A program made the position numbers and the translations under genes. A stretch of DNA of 64,000 nt from Schmidtea nova (taxonomy: Eukaryota): positions 19,096,001 through 19,160,000 of the forward strand of contig CM097884.1 of assembly GCA_044892505.1 (NCBI GenBank). Reading direction: 5' to 3'. The notes under the pieces are model-generated. The model did no database searches. It was given only the letters and a program-made list of their open reading frames with translations, and was not told where the DNA came from. Of the stretch, positions 42,125 through 54,200 are shown in pieces. The number at the start of each line of letters is the position of its first letter. Position 1 is the stretch's first letter.

Positions 42125-42190
<66 letters not shown>

Positions 42191-45100
42191 CAATAATTCT
42201 CATAATGACTATAGATCAAAATTTTTTTTATAAACAATAACACAATATTTCGGCACAGCCTTTATCAAGTGTGTATTTCTATCGTTATATTTACTTAATC
42301 CTAAATAGTAGCCTTAATTATTTTTTTAATATTTTATAATGATTTTATTGGATGAAAAAATTTATTTTATTTTAATTTTTTTGTGCGAATTGAATGTTGA
42401 TGGACGGTTTGTATTTTTTTATGAAAAAAGTCTCGGAAGCTAATCTTTGTAATGAATTTTTGAATCCCTCTTGTAGGATCTGGCATTTTGTTTCTTCTAT
42501 AGATGGAGTTGTTTTATGTACTTTTTCCCAGTGTTCGTAATAATTACTGGTTTTGATTTTAGTATGTTCATTAAGTCGGGTGCGAAAAGTTCTATGTGTT
42601 TCTCCTATGTAAGTAGCGTCACATTTTTGACAAGAAAGTTTATATACTATATTTTTGGAAAAGCAAAAGCATCGGGTTGTGGAACGACAAAGACATTTAT
42701 GTTTGGAGATGTTGGAAATTGGTGGCTTTCGGAGTTGTGATTTTAACGGTGCGGAGGTTATGAACGTTGGACGGATGTGGATAGGCAAATCTGTTTGATT
42801 AAAAATGTTGGTGATTTTGTTGGCTGTAGTGTCATTTAGGAAAGGTAATCTTAGATATGTTGTGTGTTTGTTATTGTTATTGTGTTTCTGGCGTTTTCTA
42901 TTGTTGCGTTTATTGTGGTATGGTTCGTTAAGGAAGTGTTTCTTTACAAAGTCTTCAGGGTATCCATTTTGGAGGAATCGTATTTTGAAGTTTTCTAGTG
43001 TTTCTTGTATTTTGTTTGCGTCTGAACAGTTTCTTATGGCTCTTTTTCTTTCTCCTATTAGTAATGCGATTTTGCGTTGAAGTGGAACGTGGCTTTTCCA
43101 TGGGAGGATATGACCGCTATGTAAACCTTTAGAATATAGCTCGGTGTTTGCATTTAGTGTATCTTGGCCTTTTGTAAAACTTACCATGGTATCTAAAAAC
43201 GGTATTTTACCTTCTGTGTTCGGTGTTTCAAAAGTAAATTGTATGTTGGTGTTAGTAGAATTTGCGTGTGATAGGATTTGATTGAGAGGGATTGTGGAGA
43301 CTATGAAGATGTCGTCGATGTATCGTTTCCAGAAAAGTATTTTGTCCCCAAAAAAAGATATGATCTTAGATTCTATAAAGTTCATGTAGAAGATGGCTAA
43401 GATGGGAGAAAGGTTATTACCCATGGCTAATCCATGAATTTGTTTGAATGGTTTTTCTTTAATTATGACAGTATCTGAATTTATTGCTAATTTTAGAAGT
43501 TCTATAAAGTCTTGTTTAGTTAAGTCTGCGAGGTCAGTGTTGGCTTTATGAGTTTCAAAGAAAGAAGCTGCGATATCGAAAATGTTATTCTCTCCGTGAA
43601 GAGGAATAGATCCGTAAAGATTGGAAACGTCAAGCGATCCCCAGAAGTACTGTTGTCCTGAGTTTAACGGAAGAGACGTATTTGTAATTTCGGAGACGAA
43701 TTCAGTTGTGTTTTTAAGATGAGAAGGAACCAAAGGCAAAAATGTTTTTAGAATTTCTGAAAGAACTTTAGAAAGTGTTGTGGAAGGAGTGTCAACTGCG
43801 GATACAAGAGGTCTACCTTTTAAAGGACTTTTGTGATCTTTAGGTAACATAGTCATATTACTAGGTAAAGGCTCACTGCAGTTGCATTTTAAAAGTAAAT
43901 CTTTGATTTGAAGGTTAATTTGTTTATTTGCAAGTGTTGAAAGTTTCTTATTGTATAAAATCTGAGTCGATGCAGGTAAGATTATTTTGTTTATCGGTTC
44001 ATAGTTCGAGAGATGTTCTTCAAATAGAGTATTGTATTGTTCTGTGTCAAGAGCAATTAGTCGATTTGTTTTATCTGATGGAAGAATTGTGAAGTCTTTG
44101 GAATTCTTAATTTTCTTTATGTTTGAAGTGAAGGAATTTTGTGTTGAGCAATGTTTTTCAAGAAAGATAATTTGTTCTCTGACTAAAGTTTTGACTTTAG
44201 TTTCTAAACAGCTGAGTTTTTCTTCAAGTTCAGTCGAAAAGACATGCATATTTGGATATGTTCTACGATTTGGATCCAGAAGATGATTGTGCTTTTCAGC
44301 TAAACTTGAAGATTTGGTGGATGAAATTGGTTTTAGATGGTATCCTATTTGTCTTCTTAGGCTTATAAGAGAGGCGTTAGTGATGATTTCGGCTTTTTCT
44401 AAATCTTTCTGGTTAGGTGGAGGAACAAAAGATGGTCCTAGAGCGAGGATGTTTTCTTGTGTTTTTGAAAAAATGTGATTAGATTTGTTTGTAAATGGAA
44501 GAATTGAATTTGAGTGTGAGTTAGTGTCTTTACTAAAATCTTTACTAAAAATCTTTACTAAAATCAAAACCAGTAATTATTACGAACACTGGGAAAAAGT
44601 ACATAAAACAACTCCATCTATAGAAGAAACAAAATGCCAGATCCTACAAGAGGGATTCAAAAATTCATTACAAAGATTAGCTTCCGAGACTTTTTTCATA
44701 AAAAAATACAAACCGTCCATCAACATTCAATTCGCACAAAAAAATTAAAATAAAATAAATTTTTTCATCCAATAAAATCATTATAAAATATTAAAAAAAT
44801 AATTAAGGCTACTATTTAGGATTAAGTAAATATAACGATAGAAATACACACTTGATAAAGGCTGTGCCGAAATATTGTGTTATTGTTTATAAAAAAAATT
44901 TTGATCTATAGTCATTATGAGAATTATTGATAATAATAATAAAAAAAGATCAAAGGTGAAAAAAGATAATTATGATAGTATATTGGCGGACGCCCATCAC
45001 CGAGTAGATCTATCGTTATTTTATAGTCTCAAAATCATCAAAATCAAATCACACTTACATTTTTTAAAAGAATGCAAAAGAAGAAACATCATTCCCGTGG

Positions 45101-48100
45101 GCCTGACTGTTACCAACAAACTGGAATCAACCTATCCATCTTTACAAGCATTGAAGCTTAAAGAAAAACAGGAAAAAGAATGGCTTAAGCTTAGCATTTC
45201 AGCTTGTTACAAAAAGCTAAACGAATTTACTAGTTTTCCTTGTGCTCCTCTTACTTGTGAAGATAATACTTGTTGCCAGAATTTCTCCAAAAATCTCGAC
45301 ATTCGCAAGCATAAAAAATTAGAAAAGCTACTTTCAACAAATTCAAACAACACTAAAGACACTAACTCACACTCAAATTCAATTCTTCCATTTACAAACA
45401 AATCTAATCACATTTTTTCAAAAACACAAGAAAATATCCTCGCTCTAGGACCATCTTTTGTTCCTCCATCTAACCAGAAAGATTTAGAAAAAGCCGAAAT
45501 CATCACTAACGCCTCTCTTATAAGCCTAAGAAGACAAATAGGATACCATCTAAAACCAATTTCATCCACCAAATCTTCAAGTTTAGCTGAAAAGCACAAT
45601 CATCTTCTGGATCCAAATCGTAGAACATATCCAAATATGCCTGTCTTTTCGACTGAACTTGAAGAAAAACTCAGCTGTTTAGAAACTAAAGTCAAAACTT
45701 TAGTCAGAGAACAAATTATCTTTCTTGAAAAACATTGCTCAACACAAAATTCCTTCACTTCAAACATAAAGAAAATTAAGAATTCCAAAGACTTCACAAT
45801 TCTTCCATCAGATAAAACAAATCGACTAATTTCTCTTGACACAGAACAATACAATACTCTATTTGAAGAACATCTCTCGAACTATGAACCGATAAACAAA
45901 ATAATCTTACCTGCATCGACTCAGATTTTATACAATAAGAAACTTTCAACACTTGCAAATAAACAAATTAACCTTCAAATCAAAGATTTACTTTTAAAAT
46001 GCAACTGCAGTGAGCCTTTACCTAGTAATATGACTATGTTACCTAAAGATCACAAAAGTCCTTTAAAAGGTAGACCTCTTGTATCTGCAGTTGACACTCC
46101 TTCCACAACACTTTCTAAAGTTCTTTCAGAAATTCTAAAAACACTTTTACCTTTGGTTCCTTCTCATCTTAAAAACACAACTGAATTCGTCTCCGAAATT
46201 ACAAATACGTCTCTTCCGTTAAACTCAGGACAACAGTACTTCTGGGGATCTCTTGACGTTTCCAATCTTTACGGATCTATTCCTCTTCACGGAGAGAATA
46301 ACATTTTCGATATCGCAGCTTCTTTCTTTGAAACTCATAAAGCCAATACTGACCTCGCAGACTTAACTAAACAAGACTTTATAGAACTTCTAAAATTAGC
46401 AATAAATTCAGATACTGTCATAATTAAAGAAAAACCATTCAAACAAATTCATGGATTAGCCATGGGTAATAACCTTTCTCCCATCTTAGCCATCTTCTAC
46501 ATGAACTTTATAGAATCTAAGATCATATCTTTTTTTGGGGACAAAATACTTTTCTGGAAACGATACATCGATGACATCTTCATAGTCTCCACAATCCCTC
46601 TCAATCAAATCCTATCACACGCAAATTCTACTAACACCAACATACAATTTACTTTTGAAACACCGAACACAGAAGGTAAAATACCGTTTTTAGATACCAT
46701 GGTAAGTTTTACAAAAGGCCAAGATACACTAAATGCAAACACCGAGCTATATTCTAAAGGTTTACATAGCGGTCATATCCTCCCATGGAAAAGCCACGTT
46801 CCACTTCAACGCAAAATCGCATTACTAATAGGAGAAAGAAAAAGAGCCATAAGAAACTGTTCAGACGCAAACAAAATACAAGAAACATTAGAAAACTTCA
46901 AAATACGATTCCTCCAAAATGGATACCCTGAAGACTTTGTAAAGAAACACTTCCTTAACGAACCATACCACAATAAACGCAACAATAGAAAACGCCAGAA
47001 ACACAATAACAATAACAAACACACAACATATCTAAGATTACCTTTCCTAAATGACACTACAGCCAACAAAATCACCAACATTTTTAATCAAACAGATTTG
47101 CCTATCCACATCCGTCCAACGTTCATAACCTCCGCACCGTTAAAATCACAACTCCGAAAGCCACCAATTTCCAACATCTCCAAACATAAATGTCTTTGTC
47201 GTTCCACAACCCGATGCTTTTGCTTTTCCAAAAATATAGTATATAAACTTTCTTGTCAAAAATGTGACGCTACTTACATAGGAGAAACACATAGAACTTT
47301 TCGCACCCGACTTAATGAACATACTAAAATCAAAACCAGTAATTATTACGAACACTGGGAAAAAGTACATAAAACAACTCCATCTATAGAAGAAACAAAA
47401 TGCCAGATCCTACAAGAGGGATTCAAAAATTCATTACAAAGATTAGCTTCCGAGACTTTTTTCATAAAAAAATACAAACCGTCCATCAACATTCAATTCG
47501 CACAAAAAAATTAAAATAAAATAAATTTTTTCATCCAATAAAATCATTATAAAATATTAAAAAAATAATTAAGGCTACTATTTAGGATTAAGTAAATATA
47601 ACGATAGAAATACACACTTGATAAAGGCTGTGCCGAAATATTGTGTTATTGTTTATAAAAAAAATTTTGATCTATAGTCATTATGAGAATTATTGATAAT
47701 AATAATAAAAAAAGATCAAAGGTNNNNNNNNNNNNNNNNNNNNNNNNNNNNNNNNNNNNNNNNNNNNNNNNNNNNNNNNNNNNNNNNNNNNNNNNNNNNN
47801 NNNNNNNNNNNNNNNNNNNNNNNNNNNNNNNNNNNNNNNNNNNNNNNNNNNNNNNNNNNNNNNNNNNNNNNNNNNNNTTTCATTAATTTTTTGCATTGCT
47901 AGTAAATTAATTATTATTTTATTNNNNNNNNNNNNNNNNNNNNNNNNNNNNNNNNNNNNNNNNNNNNNNNNNNNNNNNNNNNNNNNNNNNNNNNNNNNNN
48001 NNNNNNNNNNNNNNNNNNNNNNNNNNNNNNNNNNNNNNNNNNNNNNNNNNNNNNNNNNNNNNNNNNNNNNNNNNNNNNNNNNNNNNNNNNNNNNNNNNNN

Positions 48101-51100
48101 NNNNNNNNNNNNNNNNNNNNNNNNNNNNNNNNNNNNNNNNNNNNNNNNNNNNNNNNNNNNNNNNNNNNNNNNNNNNNNNNNNNNNNNNNNNNNNNNNNNN
48201 NNNNNNNNNNNNNNNNNNNNNNNNNNNNNNNNNNNNNNNNNNNNNNNNNNNNNNNNNNNNNNNNNNNNNNNNNNNNNNNNNNNNNNNNNNNNNNNNNNNN
48301 NNNNNNNNNNNNNNNNNNNNNNNNNNNNNNNNNNNNNNNNNNNNNNNNNNNNNNNNNTTTCATTAATTTTTTGCATTGCTAGTAAATTAATTATTATTTT
48401 ATTNNNNNNNNNNNNNNNNNNNNNNNNNNNNNNNNNNNNNNNNNNNNNNNNNNNNNNNNNNNNNNNNNNNNNNNNNNNNNNNNNNNNNNNNNNNNNNNNN
48501 NNNNNNNNNNNNNNNNNNNNNNNNNNNNNNNNNNNNNNNNNNNNNNNNNNNNNNNNNNNNNNNNNNNNNNNNNNNNNNNNNNNNNNNNNNNNNNNNNNNN
48601 NNNNNNNNNNNNNNNNNNNNNNNNNNNNNNNNNNNNNNNNNNNNNNNNNNNNNNNNNNNNNNNNNNNNNNNNNNNNNNNNNNNNNNNNNNNNNNNNNNNN
48701 NNNNNNNNNNNNNNNNNNNNNNNNNNNNNNNNNNNNNNNNNNNNNNNNNNNNNNNNNNNNNNNNNNNNNNNNNNNNNNNNNNNNNNNNNNNNNNNNNNNN
48801 NNNNNNGGATGACTTATTTGTTTTTAACAAGTAAAGCTTGTGATGCTTTGTGATACCCAGTGCAAATCCCCAATAGCAGACTAGTTTCGAGCATTTTGCT
48901 CTCATCAGTGCTATGCAGGAGACGCGAAAATTTCTCTCCGCGCCAGGCAAGTATAAAACAAAGTCGAAAGATTTTTGTTTTATACTATACCTGGTACACT
49001 GGATAAAACATCACTTGAATATGCAAGGTCCTACAGATAATCTGTAACTTGCAAACATGGCGTATGAATTTCATTTTCACCTCTGCGCACTAAAAGTGTT
49101 CAACAGAAACTTTTTGCAAGCGCACCCGACTGCCTTAGCTTCATTATTTCAATTTTCGCGTCTCCTGCATAGCACTGATGAGAGCAAAAAGCTCGAAACT
49201 AGTCTGCTATTGGGGATTTGCGCTGGGTATCACAAAAAATCACAAGCTTTCCTTATTAAAAACAAATAAGTCATCCGACAAATGTTTTTTTCAAAAGATA
49301 TTTCAAGTAATTTGCCTATCCACATCCGTTCAACGTTCATAACCTCCGCAGCGTTAAAATCACAACTCCGAAAGCCACCAATATCAAACATCTCCAAACA
49401 TAAATATCTTTGCCGTTCCACAACCCGATGCTTTTGCTTTTCAAAAAAATATAGTTTATAAACTTTCTTGTCAAAAATGTGATGCTACTTACATAGGAGA
49501 AACACAGAAATTTTCGCATCCGATTTAATGAGCACACTAAAAACAAAACCAGCAATTATAACGAACACTGGAAGAAAGTACATAAAATAACTCTATCTAT
49601 AGATTAACAAAATGACAGATTCTACAAAGAGGGATTCAAAAATTCATTACAAAGATTAGCTTCCGAGACATTTTACATTAAAAAAATACAAACCACTCAT
49701 CAACATTCAATTCGCACAAAAATATCATGTTTAAAAAGAAAATTAAAATAAATTTATTTTCATCCAATAAAATCATTATAAAATATTAAAAAAATAATTA
49801 AGGCTACTATTTAGGATTATGTTAATATAACGATTGTATTACACATTTGATAAAGGCTGTGCCGAAATATTGTGTTCTTATTTAAAGAAATTTTGATCCA
49901 TAGTCTTACCATTATGGAAATTATTGATATTAATATTATTAATATTTTTATTATTATTATTAATTAATATTGTTAATATNNNNNNNNNNNNNNNNNNNNN
50001 NNNNNNNNNNNNNNNNNNNNNNNNNNNNNNNNNNNNNNNNNNNNNNNNNNNNNNNNNNNNNNNNNNNNNNNNNNNNNNNNNNNNNNNNNNNNNNNNNNNN
50101 NNNNNNNNNNNNNNNNNNNNNNNNNNNNNNNNNNNNNNNNNNNNNNNNNNNNNNNNNNNNNNNNNNNNNNNNNNNNNNNNNNNNNNNNNNNNNNNNNNNN
50201 NNNNNNNNNNNNNNNNNNNNNNNNNNNNNNNNNNNNNNNNNNNNNNNNNNNNNNNNNNNNNNNNNNNNNNNNNNNNNNNNNNNNNNNNNNNNNNNNNNNN
50301 NNNNNNNNNNNNNNNNNNNNNNNNNNNNNNNNNNNNNNNNNNNNNNNNNNNNNNNNNNNNNNNNNNNNNNNNNNNNNNNNNNNNNNNNNNNNNNNNNNNN
50401 NNNNNNNNNNNNNNNNNNNNNNNNNNNNNNNNNNNNNNNNGTTGATTAATTAAAATTTGTAATTTCTTTAAATTATTTATATTAAATTTTTCTTAAATAA
50501 TAATTATTGGAAATCATTTTATTGGGACCTAACCAATCAACAATTTGTGCCTGACTTATAGATCAATGATAAAGTGAGGAGTGCAGAATGTGTCAACAAT
50601 TGTTGCGAATGTATTACGCTGTGTTATTTAATCAGGTAGAGTCATGATTATCGCGTTAATATCGTGATCAGTCGATCTCAAATATGCTCAAATATTTGTT
50701 TAATCAACCGGGAAATTTCTGCCAATAAAAATTTTTTTGTTTGTAAATCGTGACAATTCCATTTCATAGTTATATAATTGCTAGTTCAAGGAAATTTATA
50801 TATTTATCGATCTTTCTCTGTTCTTTTATGCTATAAAATGCCGTTTATACTATTAATTTACATGATTATTCTTCATTATTAGTTCTTTAGTCTATCATTA
50901 ATTCTAGGTCCATTTGAAATATATCTTTGGAAATGAGTTGAAATGAAATATTTTTTTAATCTTGATTATACAGCATATATTTCTCGATTACCAATTCTTT
51001 AGAAAATTTATTCTTTTTTGTATTTTTCTTCAAGTCGCAATATTACAATTTATTTCTGTAACATGCGCTTTATTAGTGTTTGTTTTATTTTATTTTCTCC

Positions 51101-51262: not shown

Positions 51263-54200
51263 TAATACCTTGCTTTGCGACAATAACTGCTTTCCATAAA
51301 AATCGCAATTCGAAATAAACTTATGGAATTGTACTAAAATACGAAAGAATCCTGAATTTAAAAATCTGTTTACCCAAAAACAAGGTAATTACAAGTTATT
51401 AATACAAGTTTATTTATTAATATATAGCAAAATAAAACGTAACAATTCTTTAAAATACAAAATTCAATTTGTTTATCAATAATATTCTAGGAACTATACA
51501 TAAACATTAATTATCAAGAATCAGAATCTAACACTTGTGGCTGCAAATATCTTTCTAGCGTTTGCTGGATTGTTATTTTTTTTTCGTTCTACACAACTGA
51601 TAAAGGCTGTGCCGATATATTGTGTATTTATTTAAAGAAATTTTGATCTATAGTCATCCATTATGGGAATTAGTGATATTATTATTATTAATATTATACA
51701 AAAAAAAGCTTGTGATTTTTTTTGTGATACCCAGTGCAAATCCCCAATAGCAGACTAGTTTCGAGCTTTTGGCTCTCATCAGTGCTATGCAGGAGACGCG
51801 AAAATTTCTCTCCGCGCCAGGCAAGTATAAAACAAAGTCGAAAGATTTGTGTTATATACTATACCTGGTACACTGGATAAAACATCACTTGAATATGCAA
51901 GGTCCTACAGATAATCTGTAACTTGCAAACATGGCGTATGAATTTCATTTTCACCTCTGCGCACTAAAAGTGTTCAACAGAAACTGTTTGCAAGCGCACC
52001 CGACTGCCTTAGCTTCATTATTTCAATTTCTTGAAATATCTTTTGAAAAAAACACATTTGTCGGATGACTTATTTGTTTTTAACAAGTAAAGCTTGTGAT
52101 GCTTTGTGATACCCAGTGCAAATCCCCAATAGCAGACTAGTTTCGAGCTTTTGGCTCTCATCAGTGCTATCTGTATTATCTGTAGTATTATCTGTAGGAC
52201 CTTGCATATTCAAGTGATGTTTTATCCAGTGTACCAGGTATAGTATATAACAAAAATCTTTCGACTTTGTTTTAGACTTACCTGGTGCGGAGATAAATTT
52301 TCGCGTCTCCTGCATAGCACTGATGAGAGCCAAAAGGTCGAAACTAGTCTGCTATTGGGGATTTGCACTGGGTATCACAAAAATAATCACAAGCTTTTTT
52401 TTGTTTAAAACAAATAAGTCATCCGACAAATGTTTTTTTCAATTATTAATATTGTTTTTATTATCTTTGTAGCAACTTATATCATCAATATATATTGAAC
52501 AACTTTTGTACTTCTTTTTTTCGTCAAGGTCATTTTGTCCAAAAATCGAAGTGACTTCATTAATAACAGCCATAGCTTTACTAATTTGTTTTAGAGGTTA
52601 ATATTTTTGGCTCAGGAGTTTTTTTGGATTTTCCACTAAGTTGTCTTTGTATTACAGTTCAAGATCTAGTTCCATCAAATCGTCATGTCATCATTTTGTG
52701 TTAAAATAAACTTGTTAACATCGACTTCATTCATTCCTTCAAATTCATTTGCTTCTGTACAGGTATCATCAATATAACCGATTTCATTTGAGTTAGTTTT
52801 TTTCGAACACACTCAGGCCAGATCTTCCTCCAAACACGATTCATGCAGGATGTTTATACGTCTTTCCATGATTCTGCAATATTATTCACTACATACATTA
52901 CATTATATTTTTTTACCAAAAACTGGAATTTCACTTTTTGCTAACAAAATATTATACAAAATTAATATTAACACTGTAACTGATATTTTCTTTAAAGAAA
53001 ATTTTTCTTTCAATTTTTTGCGTCGGAATATGAAAAGACGCAAATTGAAACGTCGCAAATATCTCTCTCTCTCATGCAAAGTTAATTATAAATAAATAAT
53101 ATAATTATAGAAGTGCATTGTAAAAATTAAAGATATTGGTTTGAAATTATATTAAAGTGCAGTTTTTTATAAAATTAAACTAAATTTTGTGTTAATTATT
53201 TCTATTGTCAAAAGATTTTAAGTTTACTGACAAAAACTAAATTATACTGACCAAATATCTAAAATGTAAGTTATGACTGACCCTTAATTGTTATTACTGA
53301 TCAAAATATTACTCTGTACTGGTAAAATATTTAATAAAATACTGACCGTTTATTATAAAAATTACTGACCAAATAAAAAGAAATGATTATAAAATAAATC
53401 TTTAAAAAATATTATTAATACGATATTTGAGAGAGATGCCTTTAACATATTTCAACAATATCTCGTCTAATGATTGATATACCGGCGCTCCTTTATCCTT
53501 CTAAATTTGTAAGCCTTTCTAGTTAATGTTGAGAAGCCTAGGTCACATAAATATTATGTCAAAAATGGTAATAAAACTTTGAGTACTCTTGTGAATAGAG
53601 TGAATTTTCGACTTGGATAGAAATCCAAAATTCCTCAAGAGTTTTTTCTGAAAATTTTATTTTTATAGTACGATCCGTTGACAAGGAATTTAAATCTTGT
53701 TCTTCCTGTAACAAAAATCCTCAACTCGATATATCAGTTATTATGCTAAATGGATTTCGCATCTAATCATAATTATTTATCTTCAATAAAAGTATCTAGC
53801 AATTTTTTCCAAAATTAATAAATGCTTTAGATTGGTAAATATACTGATAATAATTCCCTTAATATCTTTATAATTAAGCGAAGGTTTGGTTATTAGTGAA
53901 TTTGCTGGTAAATAACAATGATCTAGCTCTAGAGTTTCCATTTCCCGTTCGTTTCTGTAACCATTCAATCCCGGGAGTTGTTTATAATAATTGTTTTTAT
54001 AATAAATAAACAAAAATAAAATTGTATTTTTATCACATGAATTCGTCAAAACTTAAAATATCATTTAATAATGTCGAAAAGTTTAATAATTAATCGTTTT
54101 TTTCCATATTTAATAAAATATGTTTTTACGAAATATGAAAAATTTAGTGAATAATCTTAATGCGTGGTCTTCTTTTCGTAGGAAATGATCCCACAATTGA

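What the first reader, a model, noticed from the sequence alone, without database searches (positions are those of the whole stretch)
51706..52440. 382-nt retrozyme-like unit bounded by tandem hammerheads, a predicted circular RNA
Seen: two identical type I hammerheads 382 bp apart on the - strand (cleavage between 52135/52134 and 51753/51752). The non-coding unit between them has many fold-back pairings (CTTGCAAAC/GTTTGCAAG, AACAG-TTT-CTGTT, TACAGAT/ATCTGTA, CCAGG..AGTATA/TATACT..CCTGG). The genomic copy is about 1.2 units long with an 83-bp terminal redundancy and starts exactly at stem I of a ribozyme. Established: metazoan retrozymes are 170-400-nt tandem type I hammerhead repeats that give circular RNAs, and minimal hammerheads with palindromic helix III (here ACTAGT) are proposed to work as dimers. 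Inference: this is a species-specific retrozyme family whose more-than-unit-length copy came from reverse transcription around a circle. I cannot tell whether it has been described.
Basis: partly seen in the sequence, partly recalled or inferred. Interest (0 to 1): 0.85.

Follow-up and report, generated by a model that had tools for sequence, protein, structure and literature searches.

The report
Hammerhead retrozyme repeat, Penelope-style insertion
This is one copy of an abundant, non-coding 382-base repeat that carries a textbook animal hammerhead ribozyme and is inserted the way Penelope-like retrotransposons insert, so it is a new member of the published "retrozyme" class, not a new kind of element.

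Summary
A third, slightly damaged hammerhead lies on the plus strand, in a 256-bp inverted arm. The whole 747-bp composite (51696-52442) sits in (AAT)n-like DNA between candidate 11-bp target duplications.

Across the genome the exact 30-nt ribozyme occurs 3,899 times (0 for the control), as dispersed 1.1-2.3-unit copies and as arrays of at least 17-24 near-identical units.

The copies show the published Penelope-like-element (PLE) marks:
- variable 5' truncation;
- partial tandems;
- head-to-head inverted arms;
- a roughly 37-nt "tail" on one end only;
- strong microsatellite targeting.

A very active RT plus GIY-YIG PLE in the same window has the same targets and the same two alternative 3' ends, but no sequence similarity to the unit.

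Best reading: a non-autonomous, PLE-mobilised animal retrozyme, a new member of a known kind. Self-cleavage, circular RNA and copying "around a circle" remain untested, because no RNA runs were available.

An earlier follow-up in this scan (s1-381105, same genome, other locus) reached a matching reading for a related repeat.

The parts
51696..52442 (-). Whole composite insertion: inverted arm, filler, then a direct arm of 1.2 units.
51753..52134 (-). One full 382-nt unit between the two cleavage sites. It is non-coding (longest ATG ORF 47 aa) and 38.5% GC.
   Evidence: the RNA folds at -122.8 kcal/mol, z = -5.65
52129..52170 (-). Upstream type I hammerhead, with cleavage between 52135 and 52134.
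51747..51788 (-). Downstream type I hammerhead, identical to the upstream one, with cleavage between 51753 and 51752.
51696..51752 (-). 3'-terminal partial unit (unit positions 1 to about 57), the 'short' class of 3' end. Its last 25 or so nt are the T-rich subfamily variant, unlike the internal junction.
52187..52442 (+). Inverted arm: unit positions 220-382 then 1-92. Its outer end is a 'long' (tailed) 3' terminus.
52314..52355 (+). Third hammerhead, inside the inverted arm, with a G.G mismatch in helix II. It gives the best Rfam score: Hammerhead_1, 31.9 bits, E = 1.2e-5 in a 1.4-kb search.
52171..52186 (-). Filler at the junction of the two arms. It is a stuttered copy of the neighbouring ACAGATAAT.
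52443..52453 (-). Candidate target-site duplication AATATTAATAA, upstream copy.
   Evidence: read. The context is AT-rich, so chance is not excluded.
51685..51695 (-). Candidate target-site duplication AATATTAATAA, downstream copy. It is part of an (ATT)n tract.
   Evidence: read
51590..51684 (+). Old 3'-end fragment of a PLE (81-90% identical to the resident PLE's 3' end). Its flanking microsatellite received the retrozyme tail to tail.
   Evidence: The same arrangement is seen in locus L018.
48807..49312 (.). Second copy of the family, also head to head: minus arm 48807-49155, plus arm 49151-49312. A masked N stretch cuts it on the left, and it abuts a 5'-truncated PLE 3' piece at 49310-49938.
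44556..47723 (+). Resident autonomous PLE and candidate mobiliser. [quoted passage not shown] An inverted twin lies at 42175-44532.

Best explanation
The finding is one insertion of an abundant non-autonomous retroelement of the animal "non-LTR retrozyme" type.

The unit is a 382-nt non-coding RNA gene bounded by canonical animal type I hammerheads. Helix III is too short to form within one molecule (one A-U pair, loop CUAG), so cleavage should need two ribozymes paired through the palindrome ACUAGU.

Proposed cycle, all steps inferred:
1. Multimeric transcripts self-cleave to 382-nt monomers.
2. A host ligase may circularise the monomers.
3. Unit-containing RNA is reverse-transcribed by a Penelope-like element's RT/GIY-YIG enzyme at breaks in (AAT)n or (TA)n microsatellites.
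4. Synthesis starts at internal A/T-rich sites of the unit (about position 55, or about position 92) and runs for more than one unit.
5. In many events both DNA ends prime. This gives two arms head to head with both 3' ends facing outward, one arm with the roughly 37-nt tail and one without.

What is shown here: the sequence anatomy, the copy number, the insertion-site and end rules, and the parallel with the resident PLE.
For: Ribozyme:
- All core nucleotides and the three helices are present. The motif gives 4 hits in the window against 0 in 300 simulated windows.
- Rfam hammerhead models match just below threshold.
- A 2-nt loop for helix III is sterically impossible, and the palindrome duplex is worth -6.2 kcal/mol. 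This matches the published description of canonical animal type I hammerheads that act as dimers (PMC4209133).

Family:
- There are 3,899 exact 30-mers against 0 for the control.
- Arrays have a 380-382 nt period.
- Dispersed copies are 95-97% alike.
- There is no ORF and GC is 38%.
- The monomer fold has z = -5.65.

PLE-type integration:
- 5' ends are variable.
- 14 of 35 distinct loci have inverted arms.
- In 10 of 11 classifiable twin insertions, one outer end is short (about 53-61) and the other long (about 87-102). The expected share is 0.39, P = 5e-4.
- A microsatellite abuts 16 of 29 loci, against 8 of 232 control windows.
- Within arrays, both arms carry identical units.

Partner:
- The resident PLE has at least 52 intact, identical ORFs.
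- It forms tandems of 2,767 bp and head-to-head pairs.
- It ends at two alternative sites about 45 nt apart, flush with (AAT)n, (ATT)n or (TA)n.

These hallmarks are the published PLE signature (PMC8557442).
Against: - There is no RNA evidence. The four runs that hold the sequence look like DNA, since the unique flank is covered at about 13x, and they are kept only as contigs.
- No Rfam gathering score is reached.
- The hammerhead is only slightly less variable than the rest of the unit (2.0% against 3.2%). Variants are singletons with no compensatory pairs, so there is no evolutionary proof of ribozyme function.
- The unit has no detectable similarity to the resident PLE (local score 24 against a shuffle mean of 23.4). 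Xenopus retrozymes, by contrast, resemble PLE pLTRs (bioRxiv 10.64898/2026.07.22.740005). The partner is therefore inferred from integration style only.
- The end statistics rest on 35 loci, partly read by eye.
Confidence: 0.78

Rival explanations
1. One reading: copies longer than one unit arise because the reverse transcriptase runs round a 382-nt circular RNA (rolling-circle reverse transcription).
For: - 3' ends lie inside the unit, 55-92 nt past the cleavage site. The template must therefore continue across the ribozyme site, as a circle or a multimer would.
- Arrays hold units that are identical or differ by 1-2 nt, and both arms are identical.
- Circles of this size are published for animal retrozymes (PMC7229834).
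Against: - The coding PLE shows the same partial tandems, twin arms and two 3' ends without any known circle.
- The window copy mixes two subfamily variants: the internal junction is the GC/AC type, while the terminal and inverted parts are the T-rich type. A single circle would not give that mixture.
- One long array shows a 4-unit higher-order period, typical of later duplication.
- No RNA data were available.
Confidence: 0.3
2. The unit is really the pseudo-LTR or UTR of a coding PLE family that I did not see, and the short copies are solo or internally deleted remnants.
For: - Published PLEs carry hammerheads in their pLTRs (PMC4209133).
- This genome gives 49,308 first-look PLE candidates, of which only one family was scored.
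- One pair of same-strand ribozymes lies 4.4 kb apart on C1. I could not inspect it.
Against: - Of the 30 best PLE loci, two hold the unit, in each case as a separate neighbouring insertion (L031 is the window's own second copy); none has it as part of the PLE.
- There is no similarity between the unit and this PLE.
- Apart from the single 4.4-kb pair named above, same-strand neighbours within a cluster in the first 100 listed sites are about 363-383 nt apart or a multiple of about 380.
- The only unit-PLE junction in the window is unique in the genome.
Confidence: 0.1
3. It is a plain satellite DNA that spreads by unequal crossing-over and segmental duplication. The hammerhead is an inherited passenger, and there is no retrotransposition.
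For: Long homogeneous arrays exist, and one has a 4-unit higher-order structure.
Against: - At least 40 separate chromosomal places were scored, out of 1,338 first-look candidates, on all three large chromosomes.
- Copies of 1.1-2.3 units end at fixed unit positions and lie flush in microsatellites.
- The short-plus-long end rule holds in twin insertions.
Confidence: 0.05
4. It is a foldback or MITE-type DNA transposon whose terminal inverted repeats happen to contain the motif.
For: The window copy has 231-nt inverted arms that are 95% complementary.
Against: - About 60% of loci have no inverted arm.
- Arm lengths and junction points differ at every locus.
- The outer ends are unit-internal 3' termini of two different lengths, not fixed inverted repeats.
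Confidence: 0.03

Closest known systems
Animal non-LTR retrozymes (Cervera & de la Pena 2020, PMC7229834)
   Same: - Canonical type I hammerhead in every unit of a 150-450-bp tandem repeat.
- Low GC and no ORF, LTR, PBS or PPT.
- Copies range from dimers to large multimers.
- The RNA is strongly self-paired.
- Target duplications are longer than 4 bp.
- The paper says such repeats exist in platyhelminths.
   Different: - Expression, self-cleavage and circularity are not shown here.
- The head-to-head arms, the one-sided tail and the microsatellite targeting documented here were not found by a term search of that paper: 'inverted' and 'microsatellite' occur 0 times.
Penelope-like elements and their non-autonomous derivatives (Craig et al. 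2021, PMC8557442; Li, Clavereau & Pollet 2026, bioRxiv 10.64898/2026.07.22.740005)
   Same: - 5' truncation and partial tandems.
- An inverted 5'-truncated copy next to the element.
- A 30-40-bp tail at one end.
- A bias for microsatellite targets.
- Co-occurrence with an active RT/GIY-YIG PLE.
   Different: - There is no ORF.
- There is no sequence similarity to the co-resident PLE, whereas Xenopus retrozymes resemble PLE pLTRs.
- The hammerhead is canonical. The resident PLE's 3' UTR holds only a minimal hammerhead-like motif with U3-A8.
Schistosoma Sm-alpha / Sj-alpha hammerhead repeats (cited in PMC2770079)
   Same: High-copy, short, non-coding hammerhead-bearing repeats.
   Different: There is no sequence relationship that I could test. 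Those repeats were described as SINE-like, and here the insertion marks are PLE-like. That my genome is a flatworm rests only on other notes of this scan.
Newt and axolotl satellite hammerheads (PMC7229834; Forster et al. 1988, as cited in PMC4209133)
   Same: Helix III is too short for a single motif, so efficient cleavage needs two ribozymes paired as a dimer. The tandem units are about 330-350 nt.
   Different: The host is different, the sequence is unrelated, and activity was not measured here.
Plant LTR retrozymes (Cervera et al. 2016, PMC4918200)
   Same: A non-autonomous retroelement bounded by two hammerheads, proposed to cycle through circular RNA.
   Different: Plant elements have type III ribozymes inside true LTRs, with PBS/PPT and 4-bp target duplications (PMC7229834; PMC4918200). 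GC is above 55%. None of these features is present here.

Membership tests
Animal non-LTR retrozyme | Canonical type I hammerhead: full core, 6-bp helix I, 4-bp helix II, short palindromic helix III. | tested here: met
   definition from PMC4209133
Animal non-LTR retrozyme | The ribozyme recurs in head-to-tail repeats of 150-450 bp, from dimers to large multimers. | tested here: met
   The period is 380-382 nt. Copies range from 1.1 units to arrays of at least 17-24 units.
Animal non-LTR retrozyme | Non-coding, low GC (below 45-50%), and no LTR, PBS or PPT. | tested here: met
   The longest ORF is 47-61 aa and GC is 38%. PBS and PPT were not searched for specifically.
Animal non-LTR retrozyme | The monomer RNA is highly self-paired. 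| tested here: met
   -122.8 kcal/mol, z = -5.65, and 0 of 100 shuffles fold as well.
Animal non-LTR retrozyme | Expressed as linear and circular RNA of unit length. | not testable with these tools
   No RNA run holds it. The four holders look like DNA contigs.
Animal non-LTR retrozyme | Self-cleavage at the predicted site. | not testable with these tools
   This needs a bench assay. The only hint is that 5 of 34 copy 5' ends fall within 13 nt after the cleavage site (P = 0.006).
PLE-type integration (non-autonomous PLE) | Variable 5' truncation with partial tandems. | tested here: met
PLE-type integration (non-autonomous PLE) | An inverted 5'-truncated copy adjacent at the 5' side. | tested here: met
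   Seen in 14 of 35 distinct loci, including both copies in the window.
PLE-type integration (non-autonomous PLE) | A 30-40-bp tail at one end only. | tested here: met
   3' ends fall at about 55 or about 92. Ten of 11 twin insertions have one of each.
PLE-type integration (non-autonomous PLE) | Microsatellite insertion bias. | tested here: met
   16 of 29 loci against 8 of 232 control windows. The resident PLE shows the same bias.
PLE-type integration (non-autonomous PLE) | Sequence similarity to an autonomous PLE's terminus or pLTR. | tested here: not met
   There is none with the one PLE family examined. Other PLE families were not examined.
Rfam Hammerhead_1 (RF00163) / HH9 (RF02275) | Score at or above the curated gathering threshold. 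| tested here: not met
   31.9 against 34, and 24.1 and 22.1 against 52. The loss comes mostly from the missing helix III positions.
Foldback / MITE DNA transposon | Constant terminal inverted repeats that define both ends. | tested here: not met
   The arms are absent in most copies and differ at every locus.

The most novel reading that the evidence does not exclude
The genomic copies may preserve footprints of the retrozyme life cycle that have not been described.

1. Insertions could be primed from both ends of a microsatellite break. The two outward-facing 3' ends always differ by the roughly 37-nt "tail", which would explain the unexplained inverted and tailed structures of Penelope-like elements in general.
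2. Copy 5' ends pile up at the ribozyme: 9 of 34 lie inside it and 5 of 34 lie just after the cleavage site. This would be indirect evidence of in vivo self-cleavage or of template jumping at cleaved ends.
3. The mobilising PLE may act in trans on an RNA with which it shares no sequence.
Probability: 0.3. Interest if true: 0.6.

Novelty: new member of a known kind. Interest (0 to 1): 0.4.

Why it matters
Retrozymes and Penelope-like elements are both poorly understood. How PLEs create their tandem, inverted and tailed insertions is described as "still undefined" (PMC8557442). The link between animal retrozymes and PLEs rests mostly on co-occurrence and on pLTR similarity in vertebrates.

This genome offers a clean natural system for both questions. 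It holds thousands of young copies of a small ribozyme repeat next to a PLE with dozens of identical intact copies. Both use the same microsatellite targets and follow the same end rules. That makes the mechanism testable by a full census of ends and by bench assays.

The single locus in the window is in itself ordinary.

Tried and rejected
- **Rfam at gathering thresholds.** Nothing was found in the window. A whole-genome search with RF00163 was uninformative, and its controls were also silent.
- **RNA evidence.** The only four runs are contigs and look like DNA, so strand, ends and circles could not be read.
- **Selective constraint on the ribozyme.** It is weak (2.0% against 3.2%) and there are no compensatory changes. 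This is what neutral decay of dead copies would give.
- **"Retrozyme-Penelope chimera" at 49310 as proof of the partner.** The junction is unique in the genome. It falls at a normal retrozyme 3' terminus (about position 110), so a separate insertion beside an older truncated PLE explains it at least as well as template switching.
- **A terminal-specific sequence lineage, which would argue against circles.** This is rejected, because in young arrays the terminal partial unit is identical to the internal units up to the junction.
- **A rule tying short or long termini to the strand of the microsatellite.** No such rule is evident (read).
- **Exact-string searches.** The ribozyme was not found in papers, metagenome contigs or viral contigs.
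- **Looking up the PLE protein's contig.** It is not on record.
- **Counting central-unit copies by DNA search.** This returned nothing, not even the query itself, because common words are skipped.
- **Rfam MIR2630 hit (54.6 against 144 bits).** It is an artefact of the long inverted repeat.

Full report
**Observation**

On the minus strand the window holds two identical 42-nt hammerheads, at 52170-52129 and 51788-51747.
- Helix I is open, which makes this type I. It has 6 bp (AUAGCA/UGCUAU) and can extend by CUCC/GGGG across a small internal loop.
- Helix II is GAGC/GCUC with loop CAAAA.
- The core CUGAUGA...GAAA and the GUC triplet are intact.
- Helix III is one A-U pair around CUAG. A 2-bp stem with a 2-nt loop is sterically impossible. 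The palindrome ACUAGU can pair between two copies (-6.2 kcal/mol).

This is word for word the "canonical" animal type I hammerhead that is thought to act as a dimer (PMC4209133). A descriptor I wrote finds four complete motifs in the window and none in 300 simulated windows. Rfam models match but stay under their gathering scores. Hammerhead_1 gives 31.9 against 34, and HH9 gives 24.1 and 22.1 against 52. The loss comes mainly from the missing helix III positions.

The insertion does not start at stem I. Upstream on the minus strand there is a 16-nt stuttered filler, followed by an inverted arm at 52187-52442. That arm covers unit positions 220-382 plus 1-92, on the plus strand. It holds a third hammerhead at 52314-52355 with a G.G mismatch in helix II.

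The composite spans 51696-52442. It lies between two copies of AATATTAATAA (52453-52443 and 51695-51685), inside (ATT)n-like DNA that follows an old PLE 3' fragment at 51590-51684. Both outer ends of the composite are 3' ends of the unit. One ends at about position 55, the other at about position 92.

A second copy of the family at 48807-49312 is also head to head.

**The family**

The genome is 1.25 Gb with three large chromosomes. Other notes of this scan take it for a flatworm, which I did not test.
- It holds 3,899 exact copies of the 30-nt ribozyme, against 0 for the reversed control.
- Copies are either dispersed, at 1.1-2.3 units and 95-97% identity, or form arrays.
- One array has 17 direct units joined head to head to 4 inverted units. 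All are within 0-2 nt of one another, and both arms are identical.
- Another array has at least 24 units.
- The first array shows a 4-unit higher-order period, so arrays also grow by duplication.
- The unit is non-coding, 38% GC in a 30% GC window, and its RNA is strongly structured (z = -5.65).

**Integration marks**

I examined 35 distinct loci.
- 5' starts vary.
- 14 loci have an inverted arm.
- 3' ends fall into a short class (about 53-61), a long class (about 87-102), and rarely about 110.
- In 10 of 11 classifiable twin insertions, one end is short and the other long. The expected share is 0.39, P = 5e-4.
- Microsatellites of (AAT)n, (ATT)n or (TA)n abut 16 of 29 loci, against 8 of 232 control windows.

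These are the published PLE hallmarks: 5' truncation, partial tandems, an adjacent inverted 5'-truncated copy, a 30-40-bp tail at one end, and a microsatellite bias (PMC8557442).

Because the outer ends of both arms are genuine 3' termini, I read the inversions as priming from both ends of the target break. That is analogous to the twin priming proposed for L1, and it is my inference. I found no paper applying the idea to PLEs.

**The likely mobiliser**

The window holds a head-to-head pair of a compact PLE, at 42175-44532 and 44556-47723.
- Atlas neighbours have the usual PLE architecture.
- The genome holds at least 52 intact, identical ORF copies.
- It forms tandems with a 2,767-bp period.
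- Its copies end at two alternative sites about 45 nt apart, flush with the same microsatellites.

The unit shares no sequence with this PLE. The partnership therefore rests on integration style and co-residence only. The PLE's own 3' UTR has only a minimal hammerhead-like motif with U3-A8, as another first-stage note says.

The retrozyme/PLE junction at 49310 is unique in the genome and falls at a normal retrozyme terminus. It is not good evidence of co-templating.

**Function and mechanism**

I commit to the following reading. Multimeric transcripts are cut by paired hammerheads into 382-nt monomers, which a host ligase may circularise, as published for other animals (PMC7229834). Unit RNA is then copied into microsatellite breaks by a PLE enzyme.

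None of the RNA steps could be tested. The four public runs that hold the sequence are contigs and look like DNA.

Constraint on the ribozyme is weak and there are no compensatory changes, as expected for dead copies.

Two modest hints come from copy 5' ends. Nine of 34 lie inside the ribozyme (344-370, P = 5e-4) and 5 of 34 lie within 13 nt after the cleavage site (P = 0.006). The sample was chosen by BLAST score and was partly read by eye.

The coding PLE makes the same structures, and the window copy mixes two subfamily variants.

**Comparison and novelty**

Every sequence-level feature of animal non-LTR retrozymes is met. Expression and cleavage are untested, so I file it as a new member of that known kind.

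The concept that animal retrozymes are non-autonomous PLE derivatives is already published (PMC7229834; bioRxiv 10.64898/2026.07.22.740005). An earlier follow-up in this scan (s1-381105) read a related repeat in the same genome the same way.

What may be new is the regularity of the ends, short plus long in twin insertions. It deserves a genome-wide census.

**Limits**

- A majority-rule profile of the non-coding unit was used inside scripts only for coordinate mapping and per-site variation. No PLE consensus was made, and no copy was singled out.
- Masked N stretches were left untouched.

Noticed in passing
window 42175-47723: A head-to-head pair of a compact Penelope-like element (2,767-bp unit, 865-aa RT plus GIY-YIG ORF). 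The genome holds at least 52 intact ORF copies at about 100% identity, so the family looks currently active.
   Followed up: partly
window about 47610-47650 (+), repeated about 49840-49880 and about 51590-51630: The PLE 3' UTR holds a minimal hammerhead-like motif (UUGAUAA...GAAA, with a U3-A8 type core and no helix III), unlike the canonical ribozyme of the retrozyme. I read it by eye only.
   Followed up: no
window 49151-49938: A retrozyme arm ends at unit position about 110, directly against a 5'-truncated PLE 3' piece (88% identical to the active PLE). The junction is unique in the genome. It is either a template switch or, more simply, an insertion beside an older fragment.
   Followed up: partly
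L061 (G000:C1:1153500-1163499): A palindromic array of 4 inverted plus 17 direct units, all within 0-2 nt of each other. Variants recur every 4 units in the distal half, which is a higher-order repeat.
   Followed up: partly
window 52113-52370 (-): Rfam MIR2630 matches at 54.6 bits (gathering 144) only because the twin arms form a long hairpin. If transcribed, the 231-nt inverted arms would give double-stranded RNA, a possible small-RNA source.
   Followed up: no
loci L032-L060: The PLE has two alternative 3' termini about 45 nt apart, both flush with (AAT)n, (ATT)n or (TA)n. Several microsatellites hold more than one PLE or retrozyme insertion, so they act as insertion hot spots.
   Followed up: partly
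window 34234-37295, 24253-25719, 13310-14449: Other mobile-element ORFs are present: Ty3/gypsy-type protease-RT-RNase H-integrase, a DUF4371 (hAT-like) ORF, and a Tc5/pogo DDE_1 transposase. The window is almost entirely transposon-derived and is 30% GC.
   Followed up: no
unit positions 33-34 and 47-48 across loci: Two recurring subfamily variants of the region after the ribozyme (GC...AC against AA...TT) are mixed within single insertions, as in the window copy and L014. This suggests frequent recombination or template switching between unit variants.
   Followed up: partly
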